The notes below the pieces were generated by a model that was given only the letters and a program-made list of their open reading frames with translations, was not told where the DNA came from and ran no database searches. A stretch of 61,469 nucleotides of DNA, counting the filler, from Sluysia triapertura (lineage: Eukaryota), in assembly GCA_046118255.1 (NCBI GenBank). It is 5 parts of 5 records of this genome, joined end to end, with 100 filler letters (N's around TTAATTAATTAA, not from the genome) between each part and the next. Parts side by side here need not be neighbours in the genome. Positions count along the whole stretch, not along the records: positions 11,967 to 25,311 come from JBJNIA010045237.1; 4 more parts are not named here. The stretch is one strand, 5' to 3'. Both the position numbers and the translations under genes were made by a program. Positions within the stretch are counted from its first letter, which is position 1. Every line of letters starts with the position of its first letter. Shown piece after piece: positions 15,280 to 25,311 of the stretch.

Positions 15280-16689
15280 CTCTGATCATTATTTTGAATA
15301 TTTTCCAATATTGAATTGGAATATAATTAATGAATTTTTGTAACTATTGATTTTACGATTTATTATTTCGTACTTAATATCTAACAATAATTATAATCAT
15401 AATAATATTACAATAAAATTAACAATAATTATAAAAATAATAATTGTTATAAATAATAATAAAAATTAAACATTTACTAATTACTGACTCTGGAGAGCTT
15501 TTTATTTTTTAATATTAATAAATTATTAAAAACACTAAACTTTTTAATTAACTTATTCAACAAATTTGAAAAAAATCTTGAAAATTTTAATTATTAGAAA
15601 ACAAATTAACAAAATAGGCTTAAGGCCTTTAAACAAATAACGAAAAACAAAAATTTAATGTTGCTTTATTAAATAACAAAAACGATCTCGAATAATTACA
15701 TACAATCATACTTGATAAAAAAGGGATTACTGGAGTATGAAATAAACTGTTATCACTTAATGTATCATAATTTAACGGAACGTATAATAATCTTTTTAAA
15801 TTACATTTATGATAACTGATCTAATGTCGTTTTATCAATTTCTTTAGTTGACATAAAAGTATCGTTAAGTGATAATCTACGATTCAGTATTTTGTGACAT
15901 TGACGAAATTTAAATCGTCGACGTAACAAATGAATATTTAAAATGGTGAAAGAAAAATATTGATAAATAAACGACTTACTTAATCTAATTCATATTGGTT
16001 AAATGAAATTAAATGTTGTAAATAGTTTGAGTAATTACTACGTATAAATTTCGTAATGAGAATATTACAAAAACTTATCATCCAATAGACTTATAAGCCA
16101 ACTAAATATTATCGTTATATGACATTCTAAAATTTCTAATAAGTAAAGTAGTTTCTTTACGTTTATCACAACATGCAATTTCAGCTAACAGCACTTTCAC
16201 AATTATATCCAAATTAGAATTAGATTTATCGGGTGATTTTAAAACTGCTTTAATTATAGCCTATGTTGGGTATCGATTCATATTATTAGGTAAACTGTAC
16301 TTTTGCAATAGAGGACTAATCGCGATTCAAATTCCGAGCTGCTAAATTATAATAGGAGCAATCTTTTATTTCTCATTCGGGTTAATCACTTGTTTTGTAA
16401 TCTTTTCGTATTCAAATATGCACAAACGTTTCATAATATCAGAAATGTCATATTTTATATCATGTACAAAATATAAACTAAGACGATGAAGAATTGCATT
16501 AAGTTCTAATTTTTTCAACAATTCTACATTTTGTCTCGAAATAAAATAAGTTTAGTTCGGTTATTACAGTCTTCTAACACTAAATTAATCCAGTTATTTG
16601 TAACTAGCATGGAAAAGACAATAAAAATGTAATAAAATATAATAATAGGAAGATTGCATAAGAATAACATATATACGTATTATTATTGA

Positions 16690-19112
16690 ATCAGTCGAAC
16701 CGCGACAACAATATATCTCCCAGGAACCCAATATTGTGAGAACCAGAACCAGAACCACATTGTACAAATTAATCAATGGGAAAATCGCCAAATACTATGA
16801 TACAGCGACCCAAACAGCCACACCCAACAGTCTACTGCATCATTGAGCAATTGTATGCAAATCAGATTCAACCAAATGAAGCGTTTAACATGTTCTGTGA
16901 CTTAATATACCAAGTCAAGGATCAGGACACATAATATCCTGAACAAGTACAATAACGCTCGTTCTGGTAAATACACTAAGTCTCTAGAAGATGTCAAGCT
17001 CAACAAAATCTATCTATCTGACACGACTAGATCATTTCAGTTAATAATGAATGATGGAATTCCTGCCAATCGACCCAGTGAACATCAAATCCTCAAACAT
17101 TACAATAAAGACGAAGTACCTGAATTTAATTCGAAATCAATGCCCAATCTCCCAAACTTCAAGACACATTCACAGGAGAAATGGTCATCCCACAGGAAGT
17201 AAGTCATACCATGAACCAATGTCAAAATACCGCACCAGGGCAAAACAAAATCACCCTGAATGATATTCGGAGAATGGACCTGAAAGGAGAATTTCTAGCA
17301 ATCCTGTTCAACAAGATAATGGAAACTCAATAAATACCGCTCTCCTGGAAACAATTTAACACACTACTAATTATCAAACCTGGTAAAATCCAACAAGCTG
17401 ATGATCTTTCCAACTGGCGACCAATTGCTGTACTGGACATGTGCTATAGGATATTTGTCAAACTGCTAAACGGACGTGTACTGCATTGGATTAAACTTGA
17501 AAAACTTCTACATCCCCATCAAGGAGCAAATCAATAGATCCGATGGATGTATTGAGCATAACTTTGTAATCAGAACGCTCCAAGAAGTAACTGATGCAAA
17601 GAATTATGCCAGAAAGAACAAGCAACAGATTCACATAACCCTACTCGATCTAGCCAACTCATTCGGCTCCGTTCCTCATCAGTTGTTGTGGTATACTCTA
17701 GAAAGAATGGGCATGGATCTAATAACCTTAACTGTCATCAAAAAGCTTTATGACAACAGTTCCACCAGATACTTATGCAATGAATTGCTTACACAATCGG
17801 TGACGATAAAATATGGAGTCAAACAGAGATGCCCACTATCGATGACCCTGTTCTGTGTAGAAATTGATTATTTGTTCAAAAACTTAGAGGAACACAGATT
17901 TATAGAAGGCTATCAATGATGATGACATCGCCTTAATTGGAACAACAAATCTAGACCTACAAACGACAATCGACAAAATTACAACTGATGCCAAAACTGC
18001 AAATCTACTCTTTCGACCAACGAAGTATTATTACTATCATAACTGCCAACAACATCAGCAATACGGAATCAACATACAGGGCATGTCAATTAATAATGTC
18101 CTCCCGGACCAAAAAGATCAAATACTATATCTAAGTGTTCCTTTCGTTGAAACCTATAAAAGACAAGATATTAGTATAATAATCAATAAAAACCTAACCG
18201 ATCTAGAAAAAGTGGTAATATGCAATCTCGATGAAAAATACAAATATAAACTATATAATATCTATATAATAATCCATATAATAATCTATATAATAATCTA
18301 TATAATAATCCAATCGAGATTGCCTTTCCACTTCAGAAATTTGAACATCAATACACAAATCCTCAGCAGTCCACATGCACGACAATCGTCCTCATTAACA
18401 CAGGAAGTTGGATATGATGAGAAAATTCAAAGACTTCTTAAAAGGATCCTGGACTTGGAAAAATATCCTCTTAACAACCACTTCCTGTATCAGCATATGA
18501 TGATTATATTTGCCAAAGCATCATATGTGCGTTCCGACTCCTAACAGCAGCAAATCCCGACACGAAAACTACGGCGAGAATGGAATTGATTCGAGTAACA
18601 AAAGCTCGAAACCCAACTATAGCTAATCTACACGATGCTCTCAACTGGCTTAATGGCTCTCCAGCACATCATCCAGCAAAACTGCAAACGTGGTGGAGCA
18701 AAATACGAAAAGGTGTGGAAAATGTAAACCGCAAATACCACATCAAAATATGCTTCATGTTCGAGGATCCCGTGATAGCAATATATATGGGATCCATACC
18801 ACGTATATTCAACCATAAAAACAAATCAAAGGCTGGAAAGTATCTCCATGAGCTTATTAATATTGCTCAGACAGAACACTGGAAGAACCTGAAACACAAG
18901 GACGTACAATCCATATAACGTCCATGTCACTATATTCCAATAGGTTGTACAATTTACAGATTGGCAACCATTGTTGGAAATTCCTCCTGAAAGCCAGAAA
19001 TAATATTCTACAGTTGAATTACAGCCCAGAAAATGTCCGGAAACAGATGCCAACTACATGCCGCTGGTGTACATTCCCTATCAAATCTTTGCAGCATGTC
19101 CTTTGTCAGTTG
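16690..19112 (+). mobile_element. R2-superfamily (NeSL-like) non-LTR retrotransposon copy A: degenerate RT to CCHC knuckle, truncated before the restriction-like endonuclease
   Basis: Across frameshifts and stops: TAPGQNKI, IPLSWK, SNWRPIAVL, DGCIEHNF, LDLANSFGSVPH, GVKQRCPLS, DDIALIG, WKFLLKARNNIL and CRWC-x8-HVLCQ. These motifs are typical of RLE-class LINE RTs. Confidence 0.88.
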
Positions 19113-22100
19113 CGTCTCTTACCTTTTCCATTGCGCTCTCTTTTTACAGTCGCTTGAAAAGCAATTTAAACTCGATTGCGCTACATCTTTTAAAGTGCAA
19201 CACGCACAACACACTTTTTCCACATGTAATGCACGGGAATACACATTTTTACAAGCCTGGCTAGCTCAGTTGGCAGAAAACGCATTATGTTAGAACTTCT
19301 CTTTGGTTCCGCAATTTTGGAGGCGTGTGGTGACTGCGAACATTTTTCCAGAGTTCACCTACCGGTTACGCCGTGATATCCTCGATGGCAAATCTAAGGG
19401 CTTCCTCCATACTCATTTTGACTTCACCCTGAAGAAAGTATGGAGTGAAGCTTTTCAGATCAATTAATTTTTGAATCATCAATGGTATTCCGACGCAATG
19501 GGAAGATTTAATGAAGACCTTTATGATCATCAAATGGTCGTGAATTCGGGAGTTCCTTCCTTGGTCACTCGCAGTTCGGCGTCAAAGAATATGATCTCGA
19601 TTTTGGTGGTAATCAGATGAACTGCTCTGGCCTAATGGATTGTGAATATTCGTGCCTGGTGGAAAGATTTATTGAAAGCCTTTATGATCGTCAAATGTAT
19701 ATGGACACAATTGGCGGTGAATTCGGCAGCTCCCTCCTTGGTCACTTGCAATTGGGCGTCAAAGAATATAATCTCGATTTTGGTGGTAATCAGATGAACT
19801 GCTCTGTCCTAATGGATTGTGAATGTTCGTGCCTGGTGCAAACTGGTTGGATCGTGAAAGCTCGTGGCGACCAGACAGTCGGTGCTCCTCAGCAGTCAAT
19901 GCCAAGCGGTATCCAGATAGTGGCTTGTCGCTGTTATGAGAAGACCAGTCCAAGATGCAGAGCTTGTTACGCACGGGGTCCTTATGCTGCTGGACCATCC
20001 TTTCCTGAGCATCCAGATATCCATGCTCGTGAGGCGCATGCTGTTGGCCTTGGTGATCCAGCAATCCCGCTCCTTGTACCAGTTTGTATACTTTCTTCAT
20101 ACTCTATTTTGATCCGATCTTTCTTCTGTGAATGTTTGATCTGTCAATGTGTGTATGATGTTTTTATTTATTTTGTACCATATTATTTTTATGTCTTGGT
20201 TTCTTTTTCTTCCTTTAATATCTTTGCCAATCAGTCAGTTACTCCTTCTTATTATCGCGGTTCCCTCGGCGGCGGTCCAGGACCTTCTGACCTGTGGCTC
20301 TACGAGGATGAGATAGAGGCCTTCTTTTCCTCCCTACATAGTAAGAATTCTTGCCTCATTTCTTCCGTTGTACAACCCTTCCTGGACAGCCCGCGCTATT
20401 TTAAAAAATCTATAATTGGGTATAATCCGAAGTGCTCCTGCGCCATCCTTTGCATCAATAACCACTTTTCCCTCCTTGTTATTGATGCAACTGAAAAACT
20501 TTCTTTTGTTCTTGATCCTCTGTGCCCTAAGAACACAAAGCGTACCATATCTTAAGGCAAATTACTTTCGGCCCAAATCTGCACGTTATTAAATATTCAG
20601 GGAATAACATACCTGAATAACGCCCCCTGCCCTTTCCGCCTACAATCTAATTCTTATGACTGTGGGGTCATGGTCTGTGGCTATCTAGTGGCGCTCTCCC
20701 TCGGACATGACCTCACTCGCGTTAACACCAACGCAATACGTCAGATGCTTCGCCCTGGCCAATCTATTGAGACATTCAAATTCAAACTTTACCAATACGG
20801 CCCATCAATCGCGCTCTAAAAATGATAAAAAAACTGGGACAACCTGGCAACGTCCTGTAAACAATAAAACTACTTCAGACGTAAAGGACCACAAAAATAA
20901 TTCCCTCCGGTGGTACTCCCCTAAGAAGGTGAGGAGTAATCAGATACGCCTACGACAGAATTCTTACCCTGTTAATAAGTCTGAGCGTACTGTTGCAATC
21001 TTCAACACATCTTCATTCCCCTTTAATCTCCGCGTTAGCGTACCTAATAACAAAGAACAAAAGAAATGCCTTCCTCAGACTACTGAGCCCTACTATTTTA
21101 CTAAGAGTTTCTTTACACGAAACTTCATCGTATGGGAAGGGGATGAAGTTTTCTTTTGCCAACCACTTGGTGATTGTCCTCCCCAACCTATTATCCCAGC
21201 TCCAACAGTGGTTGCACCTACTACAGTGGAGGTTACTCAACTCGAACCAACTGTAACTGCTACTCTGGTTGAACCTCCGTCTTCCATATTACTTACTGAA
21301 TCTGATCCTATTATGGTTGCTGAAGATTCCAATGTTGTTTCTGATTCTGCCCTAGTCAGTACTGACATACTGATGGATCCACCTACACCTGTCGCCCCAA
21401 CAGACTCCGTTGACTTGGATGAAGTCTGTACAACTCTACTATCCACCTCAGCAAATTCTAAAGTGCCTTCCGTTGACCACCACATGAAGGTAACTTCTAA
21501 GGGTCTGATTCGCTGTGTGAGTAAGAATTGTAAAATGAGGGGTATATCAATTCTTAATGTCCTCGAACTCCGCAGACACTTCACACACAAACATGGTTTT
21601 ACGACCCCAGTTAACAACCTACTTATACTCTGTCCCACTCCTCCGTTCTTAACCCTATCATTCGGGGAGCTGGTCGACTTGCTCTTCCGACTCTGCCTGA
21701 AAATCCTGACCAAATCTTATATACGGTCATCGACCTCTCCACGGTTAGATGTAACACTTGTGACATCACCCAAAAATTCAACCCCATCGATAACAGCAGT
21801 CTTCGGGGCCACCTCCGTTCTAAACACCAAATCCCTGGTACAAAAATCTTAATAAAGTGCACTTGCTCCCTCACTTTCGAATGGCACTCCACACTTGCAA
21901 AGCACCTCCTTACTCACACTTACCCCAATAATAACAATAATACTACACCTACTTCAAAGGATCTCGATTCTGTACATGAATCGGATTGACTATCCCTAAA
22001 TGCGATCATGACCTTTTTTTAACGCCTACATAGTTGACTCTTGTGCTGTTGTGGTGGACTCGGTTACGGCCAACTTTGCTTTGTTCAATGATGAACAGGC

Positions 22101-22766
22101 TTTGCTTAATAACTTCCCCTTTTCCAAATGTTCGGCCTGGCTTCACCTCTTCTGGATCCTTAATTTGGAGTCGCATTGGATCCTTCTAATATTCAACAAG
22201 CAGCACAACTTTTACTCTATCATTGATCCCCTGGATTCTCACCCCCGTCATCTCTTCCTTCTAGGGGACTACATCTCGAATGTCATGATCGCTTGTACCT
22301 CCCTACCTCTTTCCATATAAGGAACCTTTAAAACTAAAATTTATCCCATATCCTACTCAGGAAGGCCCTACAGACTGTGGACCATTCATCTGTGATATCG
22401 CATTACAACATAAACGCAATCCTGATATTGTAATGTTTTCTAAACCAGATATTGCTGACACTAGGAAGGTACTATTTAATATAATATCAATTTCTCTTGC
22501 TGACCAACCTAGGGAGAAATCTAACCACCCACATCCTTCTTTACAATCGCTATGCTTAAAACTTAATAAGGATCAGATATCCATTGATGATGCCTTCATT
22601 GCTTTCTGTGATCTTGTCCATAAGTTGTATCCTCCTAAGTTCCCTAATATTATGATACAATCTAAACATCATAATGCCCAGGATACTAATTTAGACAAAA
22701 TCTTTACTAATAATCAAACAAAGGCGTTTCATCTTATTACTGGAACGGACTCTCCTTCTATAACTA
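19113..22766 (+). mobile_element. NeSL-like retrotransposon copy B: 5' half (head, repeats, protease 1, zinc fingers, protease 2, pre-RT linker), disrupted
   Basis: Collinear with copy C from 19232. Protease 1 (WLYEDEI / NNHFSLLVID / LDPL / QSNSYDCG, stop at 20553), C2H2-type fingers, and protease 2 (HWILLIF / IIDPL / QEGPTDCG). Its final ~80 codons are homologous to the start of copy A. Confidence 0.82.
19255..19312 (+). other. tRNA-like segment (5' acceptor strand plus A-box) near the head of copy B; counterpart at 22790-22830
   Basis: GCCTGGCTAGCTCAGTTGGCAGA resembles a eukaryotic tRNA 5' end (tRNA-Lys-like GCCCGGCTAGCTCAGTCGGTAGA). Copy C keeps CTAGCTCAGTT plus a B-box-like TTCGATTCC. 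No complete cloverleaf. Confidence 0.45.
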
Positions 22767-25311
22767 CACGGGAATACACATTTTTGCAACCCCAGCTAGC
22801 TCAGTTATGAAACAACTTTTCTTCGATTCCGCAATTTTGGAGGCGTGTGGTGACTCTGCGAACATTTTTCCAGAGTTCACCTTCCGGTTACGCCAAGACA
22901 TCCTCGATGGTAACTCTGATAGCTCCCTCCATACTCATTTTTACTTCACCCTGAAGAAAGTATGCAGTGGAGCTTATCAGATTATATGTTTATCTAAACG
23001 TCTACTCTATTTTGGCTCAATTGGAAGATTTGGGGCGGTCAGGATTAGTGGTCGGATGGAGAGATGCCTCGTTGGTCGTTCGTGGTTAATAGTCAAGGAA
23101 GTATGGCGAACAGATTTTCATGGTAATGGTATTGACTTTGCTGGCCTGTTCGATTTTTGGATCGTGCAAGTATGGAGTGGAGCTTATCGGATTAAAGCAG
23201 TCATGATTGGTGGTAAAATCGGGAGTTCCCTCGTTGGTCATTCGCGGTTGGTGATCAAGAAAGTATGGAGAGCAGATTTAGGAGCAAAACGGCGAATTCG
23301 TGGTGATGATATCTTTACTGGTCTAATGGATTCTCCTCACCAGAAGATCAGTACTTGTCACGCACGGGGTCCTCATGCGGCTGGACCATCCTTTCGAGAG
23401 TATCCAGATTGCCGTGCTCGAGAGGTGCTTCCAGATTACCTGGGTGATCCAGCTCTCAAACATCATCATCAACACGCTGGTCACATAGTCTGTTACGCAC
23501 GGGGTCCTTATGCAGCTGGACCATCCCTTCCTGAGCATCCAGATATCCGTGCTCGTGAGGTGCATGCTGTTGACCTTGGTGATCCAGCAAACCTGCTCCT
23601 GGTACCAGTTCGTTTACTTTCCTTACTTTCTTCTACTGTGATCCGACCTTTCTTCTGTGAATGTTTGATCTCTAAATGTGTGTATGATGCTTTTATTTAT
23701 TATGTAACACATTATTTTTATATCTTCATTTCCTGTTCTTCCTTTAAAATCTTTACTAACCAGTCCATTACTCATTCTTATTATCGCGGTCCCCTCGGCG
23801 GCGGTCCAGGCCATTCTGACCTCTGGCTCTATGAGGATGAGATAGAGGCCTTCTTTTCCTCCCTGCATAGTAGGAATTCCTGCCTGATTTCTTCGATTGC
23901 ACAACCCTTTCTGGACAGCCCGCGCTACTTTACAAAATCCATAATCGGATATAATGCGAAATGCTCCTTTTTCTGCGCCATCCTTTGCATCAATAACCAC
24001 TTTTCCCTCCTTGTTATTGATGCAACTGAAAAACTTTCGTTCGTCCTTGATCCTCTACGCCCTAAGAACACAAAGCGCACCATATCCTGTGGGAAGCTGC
24101 TTTCCGCCCAAATCTGTGCGTTGTTGGATATTCAGGGAGTGACATATCTGAATAATGCGCCTTGCCCTTTCCGCCTACAATCTAATTCGTATGACTGTGG
24201 GTTCATGGTCTGTGGTTATCTAGCGGCACTCTCCCGCGGACATGACCTCACCCGCGTTAACACCAACGCAATACGTCAGATTCTTCGTCCTGGTCAACCC
24301 ATGGAGTCCTCCACGCGCCGTTCAAATTCAAATTCTACGACCCAGCAATCGCGCCCTAAAAATAATATAAAAATTGGGACAACGTCGCAACGTCCAGTAC
24401 AGTATAAGGCAAACTCAGATATACTTAATAAGGATCACAAAAATTATTCCTTCCAGTGGTACACCCCTAAGAACGTCAGGACTAATAAGATGCGCCTACC
24501 ACAGCATAAGCCTGTGAATGTCTGTGAATAAATCTATGAAAAAGTTTTCTGTGAATAAGTCTGACCGCAGTGTTGCAATCCTCAACACATCCTCATTCCC
24601 CTTCAACCTCCGTGTAAGCGTACGTAATACCAATAAACAACAAAAGAAACCCCTTCCTCGGACTACTGAGCCCTACTACTTTACTAAGGGTTTCTGTACG
24701 CGAAACTTCATCGTATGGGACGGGGATGAAGTTTATCTTTGCCAACCACTTGGTGATTGTTCTCCCCAACCTATTATCCCAACGCCAACAGTGGTTACGC
24801 CTACTAAAGTGGAGGTTAGTCAACTTGAACCAACTGTAACTGACACTCTGGTTGAACCTCCGTCCCCCATCTTACCTACTACCGAAAATGTGCCTACTAC
24901 TGCTATTATTGAAGACTCCAATGTCATTACTGTTTCTGCCCTAAGCAGTAATGACATACAAATGGACCCACCTACACCTGTCGCCCCAACAGACTCCGTC
25001 GACTTGGATGAGGTCTATACAACACTATCATCCACCTCGGCTAATTCTAAAGTACCTTCCGTTGACCACCACATGAAGGTAACTTCCAAAGGTCTCATTC
25101 GATGTGTCAGTAAGAATTGTAAAATGAAGGGCATATCTATTCTTAATGTCCCCGAACTCCGCCGACACTTCGCACACAAACACGGCTTTACGACCCCACT
25201 TAACGACCTCCTTATACTCTGTCCCTGCGGTTCTGTTAAGAGTTGGGAGGAGTTTAATTCCTCACATAGCTCCCATTCTTCCGTCCTTAACCCTATAATT
25301 CGTGGAGCTGG
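22767..25311 (+). mobile_element. NeSL-like retrotransposon copy C: 5' portion (574-aa and 281-aa ORFs separated by one frameshift), cut by an assembly gap
   Basis: Diverged direct repeat of 19232-21673. Intact Ulp1/C48-like catalytic motifs (H...D...Q-x5-C) at ~23818-24240 and the C2H2 finger CVSKNC...HFAHKH. Confidence 0.85.

What the first reader, a model, noticed from the sequence alone, without database searches (positions are those of the whole stretch)
19113..25311. Non-LTR retrotransposon with two Ulp1/C48-like cysteine protease domains flanking a zinc-finger cluster
Seen: protease 1 has WLYEDEI...NNHFSLLVID...LDPL...QSNSYDCG (20289-20705 and 23818-24240). A second, highly divergent protease (~21985-22480) has [TGA for W]LSLNAI...ESHWILLIF...IIDPL and, after a frameshift, TQEGPTDCGPFIC. 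Between them lie a Thr/Pro-rich linker and two finger pairs: CVSKNC..HFTHKH / CPC..H, then (hand-translated) CNTC..HLRSKH / CTC..HLLTH. Copies B and C carry different lesions (B: stop at 20553 and shifts at ~20770 and ~21635; C: shift at ~24520-24550), which implies one ancestral ORF. Established: NeSL-clade elements can carry a Ulp1-like protease upstream of RT, and clan CE enzymes use a His-Asp-Gln-Cys order. Inference: I know only single-protease versions, so a dual-protease polyprotein may be an undescribed architecture, for example one protease for self-processing and one acting on host SUMO/NEDD8/ubiquitin silencing marks.
Basis: partly seen in the sequence, partly recalled or inferred. 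Interest (0 to 1): 0.85.

Follow-up and report, generated by a model that had tools for sequence, protein, structure and literature searches.

The report
Retrotransposon with two Ulp1-like proteases
Two decayed copies of a LINE-type jumping gene, one following the other, encode a single long protein with a SUMO-protease-like domain on each side of four zinc fingers; I found no description of this layout in the literature, but a few unannotated relatives in environmental data share a modified form of it.

Summary
B (19232-22766) and C (22767-25311, cut by the piece edge) are 87-89% identical copies of one element. Both start at the same base, and B follows an older, distantly related RT-bearing copy, A (~16800-19231).

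The B/C reading frame runs: open leader, Gly-Gly-Gly motif, protease 1, Thr/Pro linker, four Cys/His fingers, protease 2, pre-RT motif.

- **Protease 1** is a C48 domain. Pfam scores above threshold, the AF2 model (pLDDT 87.6) matches Ulp1, and B-vs-C dN/dS is 0.10.
- **Protease 2** is present only in B and is split over three frames. A profile built only from database relatives detects it (E 1.5e-8 and 0.004), and it keeps His, Asp, Gln and Cys. It was not folded.

B and C carry different lesions, which supports one ancestral ORF.

The nearest proteins, all from metagenomes, pair two or three C48 domains with RT and a restriction-like endonuclease. So multiple proteases are a trait of this lineage, not an accident of copy B. 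In those relatives the two domains are adjacent and the second is a pseudoprotease.

A Gly-Gly-Gly motif precedes protease 1 here and precedes the second domain in the relatives. Self-cleavage there is my favoured mechanism, and it is untested. NeSL membership was not testable. This is a new variant of a known kind.

The parts
16800..19231 (+). Copy A: an older, heavily decayed, 5'-truncated RLE-type non-LTR element of a distantly related family. Features: pre-RT motif at 17005, RT about 17154-18049, CCHC knuckle 19059-19106. The RLE domain is missing.
   Evidence: Pfam RVT_1 E 7.7e-10 on 17476-17916. tblastn finds 35-43% identity to the RT of P0003/5/7/11, with alignments ending at the CCHC about 170-200 aa short of those proteins' C-termini. 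Only one weak tblastx match to B. GC is 31-40%, against 42-46% in B/C. The 5' limit is approximate.
19232..20264 (+). Copy B leader/5' region. It has conserved end blocks and a variable middle with 177-nt tandem repeats (19499-19842). A conserved ATG lies at 19287. The frame is broken by a 2-nt gap after 19333 and by other indels.
20265..20282 (+). Leu-Gly-Gly-Gly-Pro-Gly motif directly before protease 1 (copy B); candidate cleavage site.
   Evidence: The same GG[G/S] motif precedes the homologous domain in eight relatives (P0011 has Gly-Asp-Gly there).
20289..20780 (+). Protease 1, copy B (C48/Ulp1-like), interrupted by TAA at 20553-20555. A 5-nt gap after 20778 shifts the frame.
   Evidence: Family profile hits E 6e-10 (N-terminal half) and 5.6e-15 (C-terminal half). 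Lesions.
20790..21513 (+). Thr/Pro-rich linker, copy B, in one frame with finger 1.
   Evidence: ORF 20707-21852. dN/dS 0.42 against C.
21514..21917 (+). Finger cluster, copy B: finger 1 at 21514-21594, finger 2 mostly removed by the 49-nt deletion after 21632, finger 3 at 21750-21827, finger 4 at 21858-21917. The layout is a duplicated two-finger module.
   Evidence: Finger 1 dN/dS 0.10. Pfam recognises none of the fingers. Finger 3 has a weak pairwise match to an R2 C2H2 finger, E 0.017.
21966..22480 (+). Protease 2 (C48/Ulp1-like), copy B only, spread over three frames. Breaks: TGA at 21987-21989, stop at 22020-22022 with a frame change, stop at 22318-22320 with a second frame change. Catalytic residues: His in ESHW (22168), Asp in IIDPL (22219), Gln and Cys in TQEGPTDCG (22355).
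   Evidence: A profile built only from database relatives hits 22012-22317 at E 1.5e-8 (profile positions 19-98) and 22289-22807 at E 0.004 (positions 127-144), in collinear order. Pfam C48 E 0.029 is below threshold. Alignment and tree.
22481..22766 (+). Pre-RT region of copy B (KIFTNNQTKAF at 22697), in frame with the C-terminal part of protease 2. It ends abruptly where copy C starts.
   Evidence: Matches the pre-RT region of relatives and of copy A.
22767..23793 (+). Copy C leader. The ORF is open from ATG 22807 through 330 codons. It contains 135-nt repeats at 23349 and 23484.
   Evidence: 0 stops, against 9-25 in the other five frames; 0 of 2000 shuffles were stop-free. No codon-position bias against B.
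23794..24300 (+). Gly-Gly-Gly motif (23794-23811) and intact protease 1, copy C.
   Evidence: Pfam PF02902 at 24.0 bits, above the 20.7 cut-off, E 3.9e-5. AF2 pLDDT 87.6, pTM 0.85. Foldseek top hit Ulp1 1euv, E 1.7e-7, TM 0.76. dN/dS 0.10.
24301..25311 (+). Copy C linker with a 34-nt frame-breaking insertion (24504-24537), then finger 1 (25103-25183) and finger 2 (25220-25276). Cut by the edge of the piece.

Best explanation
B and C are two diverged copies of one family of non-LTR retrotransposons of the restriction-like-endonuclease type (the R2/NeSL supergroup). They most likely arrived as nested full-length insertions: C into B, and B into the older relative A.

The family's single ORF encodes, in order:
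1. a poorly constrained leader of about 330 aa;
2. a Gly-Gly-Gly motif;
3. C48 protease 1;
4. a Thr/Pro-rich linker;
5. four Cys/His fingers;
6. C48 protease 2;
7. the pre-RT region.
RT, a CCHC knuckle and the endonuclease are expected to follow, but this is inferred from relatives and not seen for this family.

Carrying more than one C48 domain is inherited in this lineage, not an accident of copy B.

The mechanism I favour is polyprotein self-processing, and it is inferred. At least one protease would cut after the Gly-Gly of the conserved motif. Ulp1/SENP enzymes cut after Gly-Gly, and the clan-CE proteases of adenovirus and African swine fever virus cut polyproteins at Gly-Gly-X. Cutting there would free the leader from the enzymatic part. 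In the relatives it would free the active first protease. An added role on host SUMO-like conjugates is possible and untested.
For: - **Architecture.** In-frame stretches overlap from protease 1 to the pre-RT motif across B and C. The frame-breaking indels of 5, 34 and 49 nt, and the stop, differ between the copies.
- **Selection between the B and C lineages.** dN/dS is 0.10 for protease 1, 0.10 for finger 1 and 0.42 for the linker. Off-frames give 1.1-2.2.
- **C48 identity.** Pfam scores protease 1 above threshold. The family profile matches SENP2 and Ulp1 at E about 1e-15. The AF2 model with Foldseek matches Ulp1. Protease 2 is detected by a profile containing no window sequence, and its His, Asp, Gln and Cys align.
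- **Lineage trait.** Of the 6 hits among 1.84 billion representative proteins, 5 have two or three C48 domains, and the long ones have RT, CCHC and RLE. Three more such proteins were found later.
- **RT relationship.** Copy A's RT is 35-43% identical to theirs.
- **GGG motif.** It is conserved before the homologous domain in 8 relatives; P0011 has Gly-Asp-Gly there. It lies in a low-confidence, exposed linker in the AF2 model of P0007. Coding constraint in B/C begins exactly there.
- **Nesting.** Both junctions fall at the identical first base of the downstream copy. Decay increases from C to B to A.
Against: - Protease 2 is seen in only one copy. It is broken in three places, falls below the Pfam threshold, and was not folded.
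- No RT of the B/C family itself is inside the piece.
- Relatives place the two proteases side by side with no fingers between them. In the tree, protease 2 groups with their first domain, not their RT-proximal one. The window's domain order is therefore not simply theirs.
- Nothing shows cleavage. AF2 did not dock the GGG linker into either active site (pTM 0.53).
- Ulp1-type enzymes normally need a folded SUMO domain before the Gly-Gly.
- The leader is open in C but broken in B, and it shows no codon-position bias. It may be an RNA or DNA element rather than a protein.
Confidence: 0.6

Rival explanations
1. Copy B is a chimera or rearrangement. Under this reading, protease 2 came from another element or from a local duplication or insertion, and the functional family has one protease, like NeSL-1.
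For: Protease 2 is seen in a single decayed copy. Copy C is cut before that region. The locus is a nest of elements. The domain order differs from that of the relatives.
Against: - Finger 4 runs in the same frame into the N-terminal helix of protease 2.
- The C-terminal part of protease 2 runs in frame into the pre-RT motif.
- There are no flanking repeats or composition break around 21950-22500.
- There is no DNA similarity between the two protease regions.
- All long relatives carry two or more C48 domains before RT.
Confidence: 0.12
2. The proteases act mainly on the host. They would remove SUMO, NEDD8 or ubiquitin from chromatin or silencing factors at or near the integration site. The GGG motif would then be incidental.
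For: The profile and the fold are closest to SENP1/2, Ulp1 and SENP8, and also to bacterial CE-clan deSUMOylases and deubiquitinases. Two catalytically complete domains are kept, and protease 1 is under purifying selection.
Against: There is no direct evidence. The Gly-Gly-Gly motif is conserved at one fixed position across very divergent relatives, at 15-33% domain identity. That is hard to explain without a role in cis. The two functions do not exclude each other.
Confidence: 0.2
3. One of the two window domains, most likely protease 2, is a non-catalytic binding module, like the second domain of the relatives. Its catalytic residues would then be only incompletely lost.
For: In seven relatives the RT-proximal C48 domain has Cys replaced by Ser or Thr, has lost Gln and has mostly lost His. 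Protease 2 is also RT-proximal and has a very long branch in the tree.
Against: Protease 2 keeps His, Asp, Gln and Cys in the aligned columns despite the decay of copy B. It groups with the catalytically complete first domains at 83/87 support, not with the pseudoprotease clade.
Confidence: 0.1
4. The head-to-tail A/B/C arrangement is an assembly artefact, or the product of template switching during one reverse-transcription event, rather than nested insertions.
For: All three units share one orientation. Each junction lies at the exact 5' end of the downstream unit. R2-type RTs are known to jump between templates (established knowledge).
Against: The units differ strongly in decay and GC content: A is far more decayed than B, and B more than C. 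B and C differ by about 12%, with signs of selection, so they are not copies made in one event. This rival concerns the locus only, not the protein architecture.
Confidence: 0.08

Closest known systems
NeSL-1 of Caenorhabditis and Utopia-1_TSP of Trichinella (RLE-type non-LTR elements with an N-terminal Ulp1-like protease; PMC4640811)
   Same: A single ORF with an Ulp1-like cysteine protease and zinc fingers upstream of RT. Relatives and copy A carry a C-terminal CCHC (plus RLE in the relatives).
   Different: Those elements are described with one protease. Here there are two, separated by four fingers. Rfam found no spliced-leader or U2 snRNA target in the piece. The RT relationship to NeSL or Utopia was not tested.
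Unannotated metagenome proteins P0003, P0005, P0007, P0009, P0010, P0011 (full length) and P0002, P0006 (fragments)
   Same: They are the nearest relatives of protease 1. Their RT is 35-43% identical to that of copy A. They have two or three C48 domains before RT and the conserved GG[G/S] motif before a C48 domain.
   Different: Their C48 domains are adjacent, with no finger cluster between them. Their RT-proximal domain is a pseudoprotease, whereas both window domains keep the catalytic residues. Domain identity to the window is only 15-33%.
R2 elements (nearest named protein: R2 of the spider Araneus ventricosus, P0025)
   Same: RT, CCHC and RLE backbone with N-terminal C2H2 fingers. E 1e-58 to the RT-RLE part of P0003.
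   Different: R2 has no protease (Pfam on P0025) and targets 28S rDNA, which is absent from the piece.
Cellular Ulp1/SENP proteases, and the clan-CE processing proteases of adenovirus (adenain), poxviruses (I7L) and African swine fever virus (pS273R)
   Same: The fold and the His-Asp-Gln-Cys order. These enzymes cut after Gly-Gly or at Gly-Gly-X, which fits the conserved GGG motif (established knowledge, used here as an analogy).
   Different: They are not part of a retroelement. Cleavage by the window's domains has not been shown.

Membership tests
Peptidase C48 (Ulp1/SENP, clan CE): protease 1 | Match to Pfam PF02902 above its gathering score | tested here: met
   24.0 bits against a cut-off of 20.7, E 3.9e-5, on the copy C ORF.
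Peptidase C48 (Ulp1/SENP, clan CE): protease 1 | Ulp1-type fold | tested here: met
   AF2 pLDDT 87.6, pTM 0.85. Foldseek top hits are Ulp1 1euv (E 1.7e-7, TM 0.76), SENP1 and SENP2.
Peptidase C48 (Ulp1/SENP, clan CE): protease 1 | Catalytic His, Asp, Gln, Cys in that order | tested here: met
   NNHF, VLDPL and QSNSYDCG align with the catalytic columns of the relatives and of SENP2.
Peptidase C48 (Ulp1/SENP, clan CE): protease 2 | Match to Pfam PF02902 above its gathering score | tested here: not met
   14.6 bits against a cut-off of 20.7, E 0.029. Only the middle piece could be scored, because the domain is split over three frames. A lineage-specific profile with no window sequence detects it at E 1.5e-8 and 0.004.
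Peptidase C48 (Ulp1/SENP, clan CE): protease 2 | Catalytic His, Asp, Gln, Cys in that order | tested here: met
   ESHW, IIDPL and TQEGPTDCG fall in the catalytic columns. The alignment read the breaks through as X, inside a script only.
Peptidase C48 (Ulp1/SENP, clan CE): protease 2 | Ulp1-type fold | not tested
   The broken domain has no single reference, so it was not sent to structure prediction.
Peptidase C48: both domains | Peptidase or isopeptidase activity after Gly-Gly | not testable with these tools
   This needs an enzyme assay.
RLE-type non-LTR retrotransposon (R2/NeSL supergroup) | Reverse transcriptase of the non-LTR type | tested here: inconclusive
   It is present in copy A (RVT_1 E 7.7e-10; 35-43% identity to the relatives' RT). 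B stops at the pre-RT motif and C is cut, so the B/C family's own RT is not seen.
RLE-type non-LTR retrotransposon (R2/NeSL supergroup) | C-terminal CCHC knuckle followed by a PD-(D/E)xK endonuclease | tested here: inconclusive
   Copy A has the CCHC at 19059-19106 but ends before the endonuclease. Relatives P0003/5/7/9/10/11 have both.
NeSL clade | RT groups with NeSL-1 in a phylogeny | not tested
   No NeSL or Utopia reference sequences were obtainable with these tools. The nearest named protein is an R2.
NeSL clade | Insertion into spliced-leader genes | tested here: inconclusive
   Rfam at E up to 1 found no SL RNA. However, both visible 5' junctions lie inside other element copies, so the native target cannot be read.
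Utopia | Insertion into U2 snRNA genes | tested here: inconclusive
   Rfam found no U2 snRNA. The same caveat applies as for NeSL.

The most novel reading that the evidence does not exclude
The element is translated from a conserved ATG through a long, freely evolving, repeat-bearing leader. That leader is then shed by cleavage at the Gly-Gly-Gly site by one of the element's own Ulp1-like proteases. The second, RT-attached protease (a pseudoprotease in the relatives) would serve as a SUMO- or ubiquitin-like-binding or -removing module that steers the RT complex on chromatin. This would be a two-protease division of labour not known for any retrotransposon.
Probability: 0.15. Interest if true: 0.75.

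Novelty: new variant of a known kind. Interest (0 to 1): 0.5.

Why it matters
Proteases are rare in non-LTR retrotransposons, and their role in NeSL-type elements has never been tested. This lineage keeps two or three Ulp1-like domains, a conserved Gly-Gly-Gly junction and, in some members, a dedicated pseudoprotease. That makes it a tractable system for two questions: whether LINE-type polyproteins are self-processed, and whether they tamper with host SUMO-like marks. It also shows that public metagenome protein sets hold a poorly sampled, undescribed branch of site-specific-type retroelements. That class is currently of interest for genome engineering.

Tried and rejected
- **Word-index protein search** with the copy C ORF (protease 1 region): no hit.
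- **Metagenome DNA scan** with protease 1 plus P0001: three short loci with unrelated Ulp1-like fragments, uninformative.
- **Rfam at permissive E-value:** no ribozyme, snRNA, SL RNA or rRNA. The single lncRNA hit at E 0.18 is chance.
- **ARAGORN:** no tRNA.
- **Pfam on the finger pieces:** nothing, even at E up to 10. The fingers rest on pattern, enrichment and selection only.
- **Remains of protease 2 in copy A:** none significant. A is too distant and too decayed to serve as a second witness.
- **AF2 of a natural two-domain relative (P0007:1-370):** intended to show whether the GGG linker docks in an active site. Both domains fold, but the linker is low-confidence and the domain arrangement is unreliable.
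- **RNA folding of the conserved 5' block:** z -2.6 for C but -1.2 for B, so not convincing.
- **Supplementary protease alignment of PMC4640811:** not held as text.
- **'TGA codes for Trp':** rejected. It is one of several ordinary lesions in a decayed copy.
- **A host SENP pseudogene:** rejected. The domains cluster with retroelement proteases and lie in frame with the fingers and the pre-RT motif.

Full report
**Layout of the piece.** From 11967 to about 16450 the DNA is AT-rich (22-31% GC) with no long ORFs. From about 16500 the GC content rises to 38-46%. Repeat finding and a pairwise alignment show two units that share 87-89% identity. B runs 19232-22766. C runs 22767-25311 and is cut by the edge of the piece. 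Their similarity begins at exactly the same base, CACGGG. In front of B lies copy A, a third and much more decayed unit.

**Copy A.**
- It carries a reverse transcriptase (Pfam RVT_1, E 7.7e-10).
- It has a pre-RT motif at 17005 and a CCHC knuckle at 19059-19106.
- It has many stops and frame changes.
- tblastn with the nearest database proteins aligns A from the pre-RT region to the CCHC at 35-43% identity in the RT. A ends about 170-200 residues short of their C-termini, so the restriction-like endonuclease is missing.
- A shares only one weak protein-level match with B: 32% over 38 aa in the pre-RT region.
- A is therefore a distant cousin of B/C, not an old copy of the same family.

**Reading frame of B and C.** The order is:
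1. a leader of about 1 kb;
2. Leu-Gly-Gly-Gly-Pro-Gly;
3. protease 1;
4. a Thr/Pro-rich linker;
5. fingers 1 and 2;
6. fingers 3 and 4;
7. protease 2;
8. a pre-RT region ending in KIFTNNQTKAF.

At that point B stops and C begins. Continuity is shown by overlapping in-frame stretches:
- protease 1 into the linker, in C;
- the linker through finger 1, in both copies;
- finger 2, in C;
- the end of finger 2 through fingers 3 and 4 into the first helix of protease 2, in one frame of B;
- the C-terminal part of protease 2 into the pre-RT motif, in one frame of B.

**Lesions.** The frame-breaking differences between the copies are distinct.
- B has a TAA at 20553, a 5-nt gap after 20778 and a 49-nt deletion after 21632 that removes most of finger 2.
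- C has a 34-nt insertion at 24504-24537.
- Each indel length accounts exactly for the frame change seen.
- B has additional breaks inside protease 2: TGA at 21987, and stops with +1 frame changes near 22020 and 22320.
- C is the least decayed copy, then B, then A.

**Selection.** A Nei-Gojobori comparison of B and C was run in the coding frame.

| Region | dN/dS | dS | dN |
|---|---|---|---|
| Protease 1 | 0.10 | 0.44 | 0.043 |
| Finger 1 | 0.10 | 0.40 | 0.042 |
| Linker | 0.42 | 0.29 | 0.12 |

The two wrong frames give 1.1-2.2. B and C therefore descend from different active lineages, and protease 1 and the finger were kept by selection. Third-position bias starts at about 23780, right at the Gly-Gly-Gly motif. 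Protease 2 cannot be tested this way, because only B holds it.

**Are both domains C48?**
- *Protease 1.* It passes the Pfam gathering score (24.0 against 20.7). A profile of the lineage's domains matches SENP2, Ulp1 and SENP1 at E about 1e-15, and SENP8 at 1e-8. Its AF2 model (pLDDT 87.6, pTM 0.85) finds Ulp1 1euv first (E 1.7e-7, TM 0.76), followed by SENPs and other clan-CE enzymes.
- *Protease 2.* Its middle piece gives Pfam E 0.029, below threshold. I built a profile only from database relatives, with no window sequence. It hits the piece 22012-22317 at E 1.5e-8 (profile positions 19-98) and the next-frame piece 22289-22807 at E 0.004 (positions 127-144), in collinear order. In the alignment its His, Asp, Gln and Cys fall in the catalytic columns. 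The TGA lies where several relatives have Trp.
- *What was left out.* A read-through of protease 2 has no reference. It was used only inside scripts, with X at each break. It was not sent to the structure or database tools. Its fold is therefore untested.

**Fingers.**
- Pfam recognises none of them.
- The Cys/His pattern occurs 7 times in the six-frame translation, against 0.6 expected. Five of those seven are these fingers.
- The two pairs look like a duplicated module.
- Finger 1 is under purifying selection.
- Finger 3 weakly resembles a C2H2 finger of a spider R2 protein (E 0.017 in a single comparison).

**Relatives.**
- An exhaustive HMMER search of 1.84 billion representative proteins with protease 1 found only six proteins. 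All come from metagenome or run assemblies, and none carries an organism name.
- Five of the six have two or three C48-like domains. The long ones continue into RT, CCHC and an RLE-like C-terminus.
- A profile search added three more such proteins.
- In these relatives the two domains are adjacent. The first is catalytically complete. The second has Ser or Thr in place of Cys, has lost Gln and has mostly lost His, so it is a pseudoprotease.
- P0005 has three C48-like domains.
- In a domain tree the pseudoprotease domains form one group (support 83/80). Window protease 2 falls with the active first domains (83/87, on a long branch). Window protease 1 pairs with P0001 (90/94).
- The nearest named protein to the RT-RLE part is an R2 protein of Araneus ventricosus (E 1e-58, 26% identity).
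- No NeSL or Utopia reference was available, so clade membership was not tested.

**The Gly-Gly-Gly motif.**
- GG[G/S] sits a few residues before the N-terminal helix of window protease 1 and of P0001.
- It sits in the same position before the second domain of seven of the eight two-domain relatives. P0011 has Gly-Asp-Gly there.
- This holds despite only 15-33% domain identity.
- In the AF2 model of P0007:1-370 both domains fold, and the linker holding the motif is low-confidence, which fits an exposed loop. No docking is predicted (pTM 0.53).
- From established knowledge, Ulp1/SENP enzymes cut after Gly-Gly, and the clan-CE proteases of adenovirus and African swine fever virus process polyproteins at Gly-Gly-X sites.
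- I therefore favour self-cleavage at this motif. This is an inference, not a result.

**The leader.**
- In C, the protease 1 frame is open for 330 codons from an ATG that is conserved in B (22807 and 19287).
- That frame has no stops, against 9-25 in the other five frames. None of 2000 dinucleotide shuffles was stop-free.
- The internal repeat periods, 177 and 135 nt, are multiples of three.
- Yet B and C show no codon-position bias there (dN/dS about 1). Their divergence (0.13-0.16) is lower than the synonymous divergence of the coding part.
- So the leader is either translated without constraint on its residues, or it is constrained as RNA or DNA. I could not decide which.

**The locus.**
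- Both junctions lie at the exact first base of the downstream unit.
- All three units point the same way.
- Decay grows from C to B to A.
- Nested full-length insertions (C into B, B into A) explain this best.
- The missing 3' parts would lie beyond the piece, so this cannot be checked here.

**Literature.** Five full-text searches found only the single N-terminal Ulp1-like protease of NeSL families and Utopia-1_TSP (PMC4640811). No paper describes two such domains in a retrotransposon. Repbase and Dfam could not be searched.

**Verdict.** The dual-protease architecture is real as far as one copy and its relatives can show. It is a lineage trait, and its finger-separated, doubly catalytic form is a new variant of the known NeSL/Utopia-type design. 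The proposed functions remain untested.

Noticed in passing
window 22807-23796 (C) and 19287-20264 (B): The leader before the Gly-Gly-Gly motif is an open frame of 330 codons in C, starting at an ATG conserved in B. None of 2000 shuffles was stop-free, and the repeat periods (177 and 135 nt) are multiples of three. Yet B and C show no codon-position bias there, and they diverge less than the synonymous sites of the coding part.
   Followed up: partly
window 19259-19285: B carries a stretch (GCTAGCTCAGTTGGCAG...) that resembles a tRNA D-arm or a Pol III A box. Fifteen of its bases are absent from C, and ARAGORN calls no tRNA. Probably chance or a relic.
   Followed up: partly
P0002, P0003, P0006, P0007, P0009, P0010, P0011 (second C48 domain); P0005: In the metagenome relatives the RT-proximal C48 domain has Ser or Thr in place of the catalytic Cys and has lost Gln and usually His, so it is a conserved pseudoprotease. 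P0005 has three C48-like domains.
   Followed up: partly
window 19100-19142 and 18246-18310: A 22-nt tandem duplication lies just upstream of the A/B junction. A 12-nt microsatellite (5.5 copies) lies inside copy A's coding remnant.
   Followed up: no
window 21657-21677 and 25295-25309: An Ile-Ile-Arg-Gly-Ala(-Gly) stretch, conserved in B and C, lies between fingers 2 and 3. It fits the adenain-type (M/I/L)-X-G-X/G cleavage pattern known from the literature. It may be a second processing site or may be chance.
   Followed up: no
L001 1-336, L002 1-513, L003 3-707: The contigs of the full-length relatives carry a separate upstream ORF, cut by the contig end. The one in L002 has CxxC pairs, and L002 ends in poly(A), so it is probably a transcript. 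These relatives may therefore have two ORFs.
   Followed up: no
window 15382-15466: A (TAA)n microsatellite lies in the AT-rich flank. The host genome background is about 22-30% GC, and the organism was not identified.
   Followed up: no
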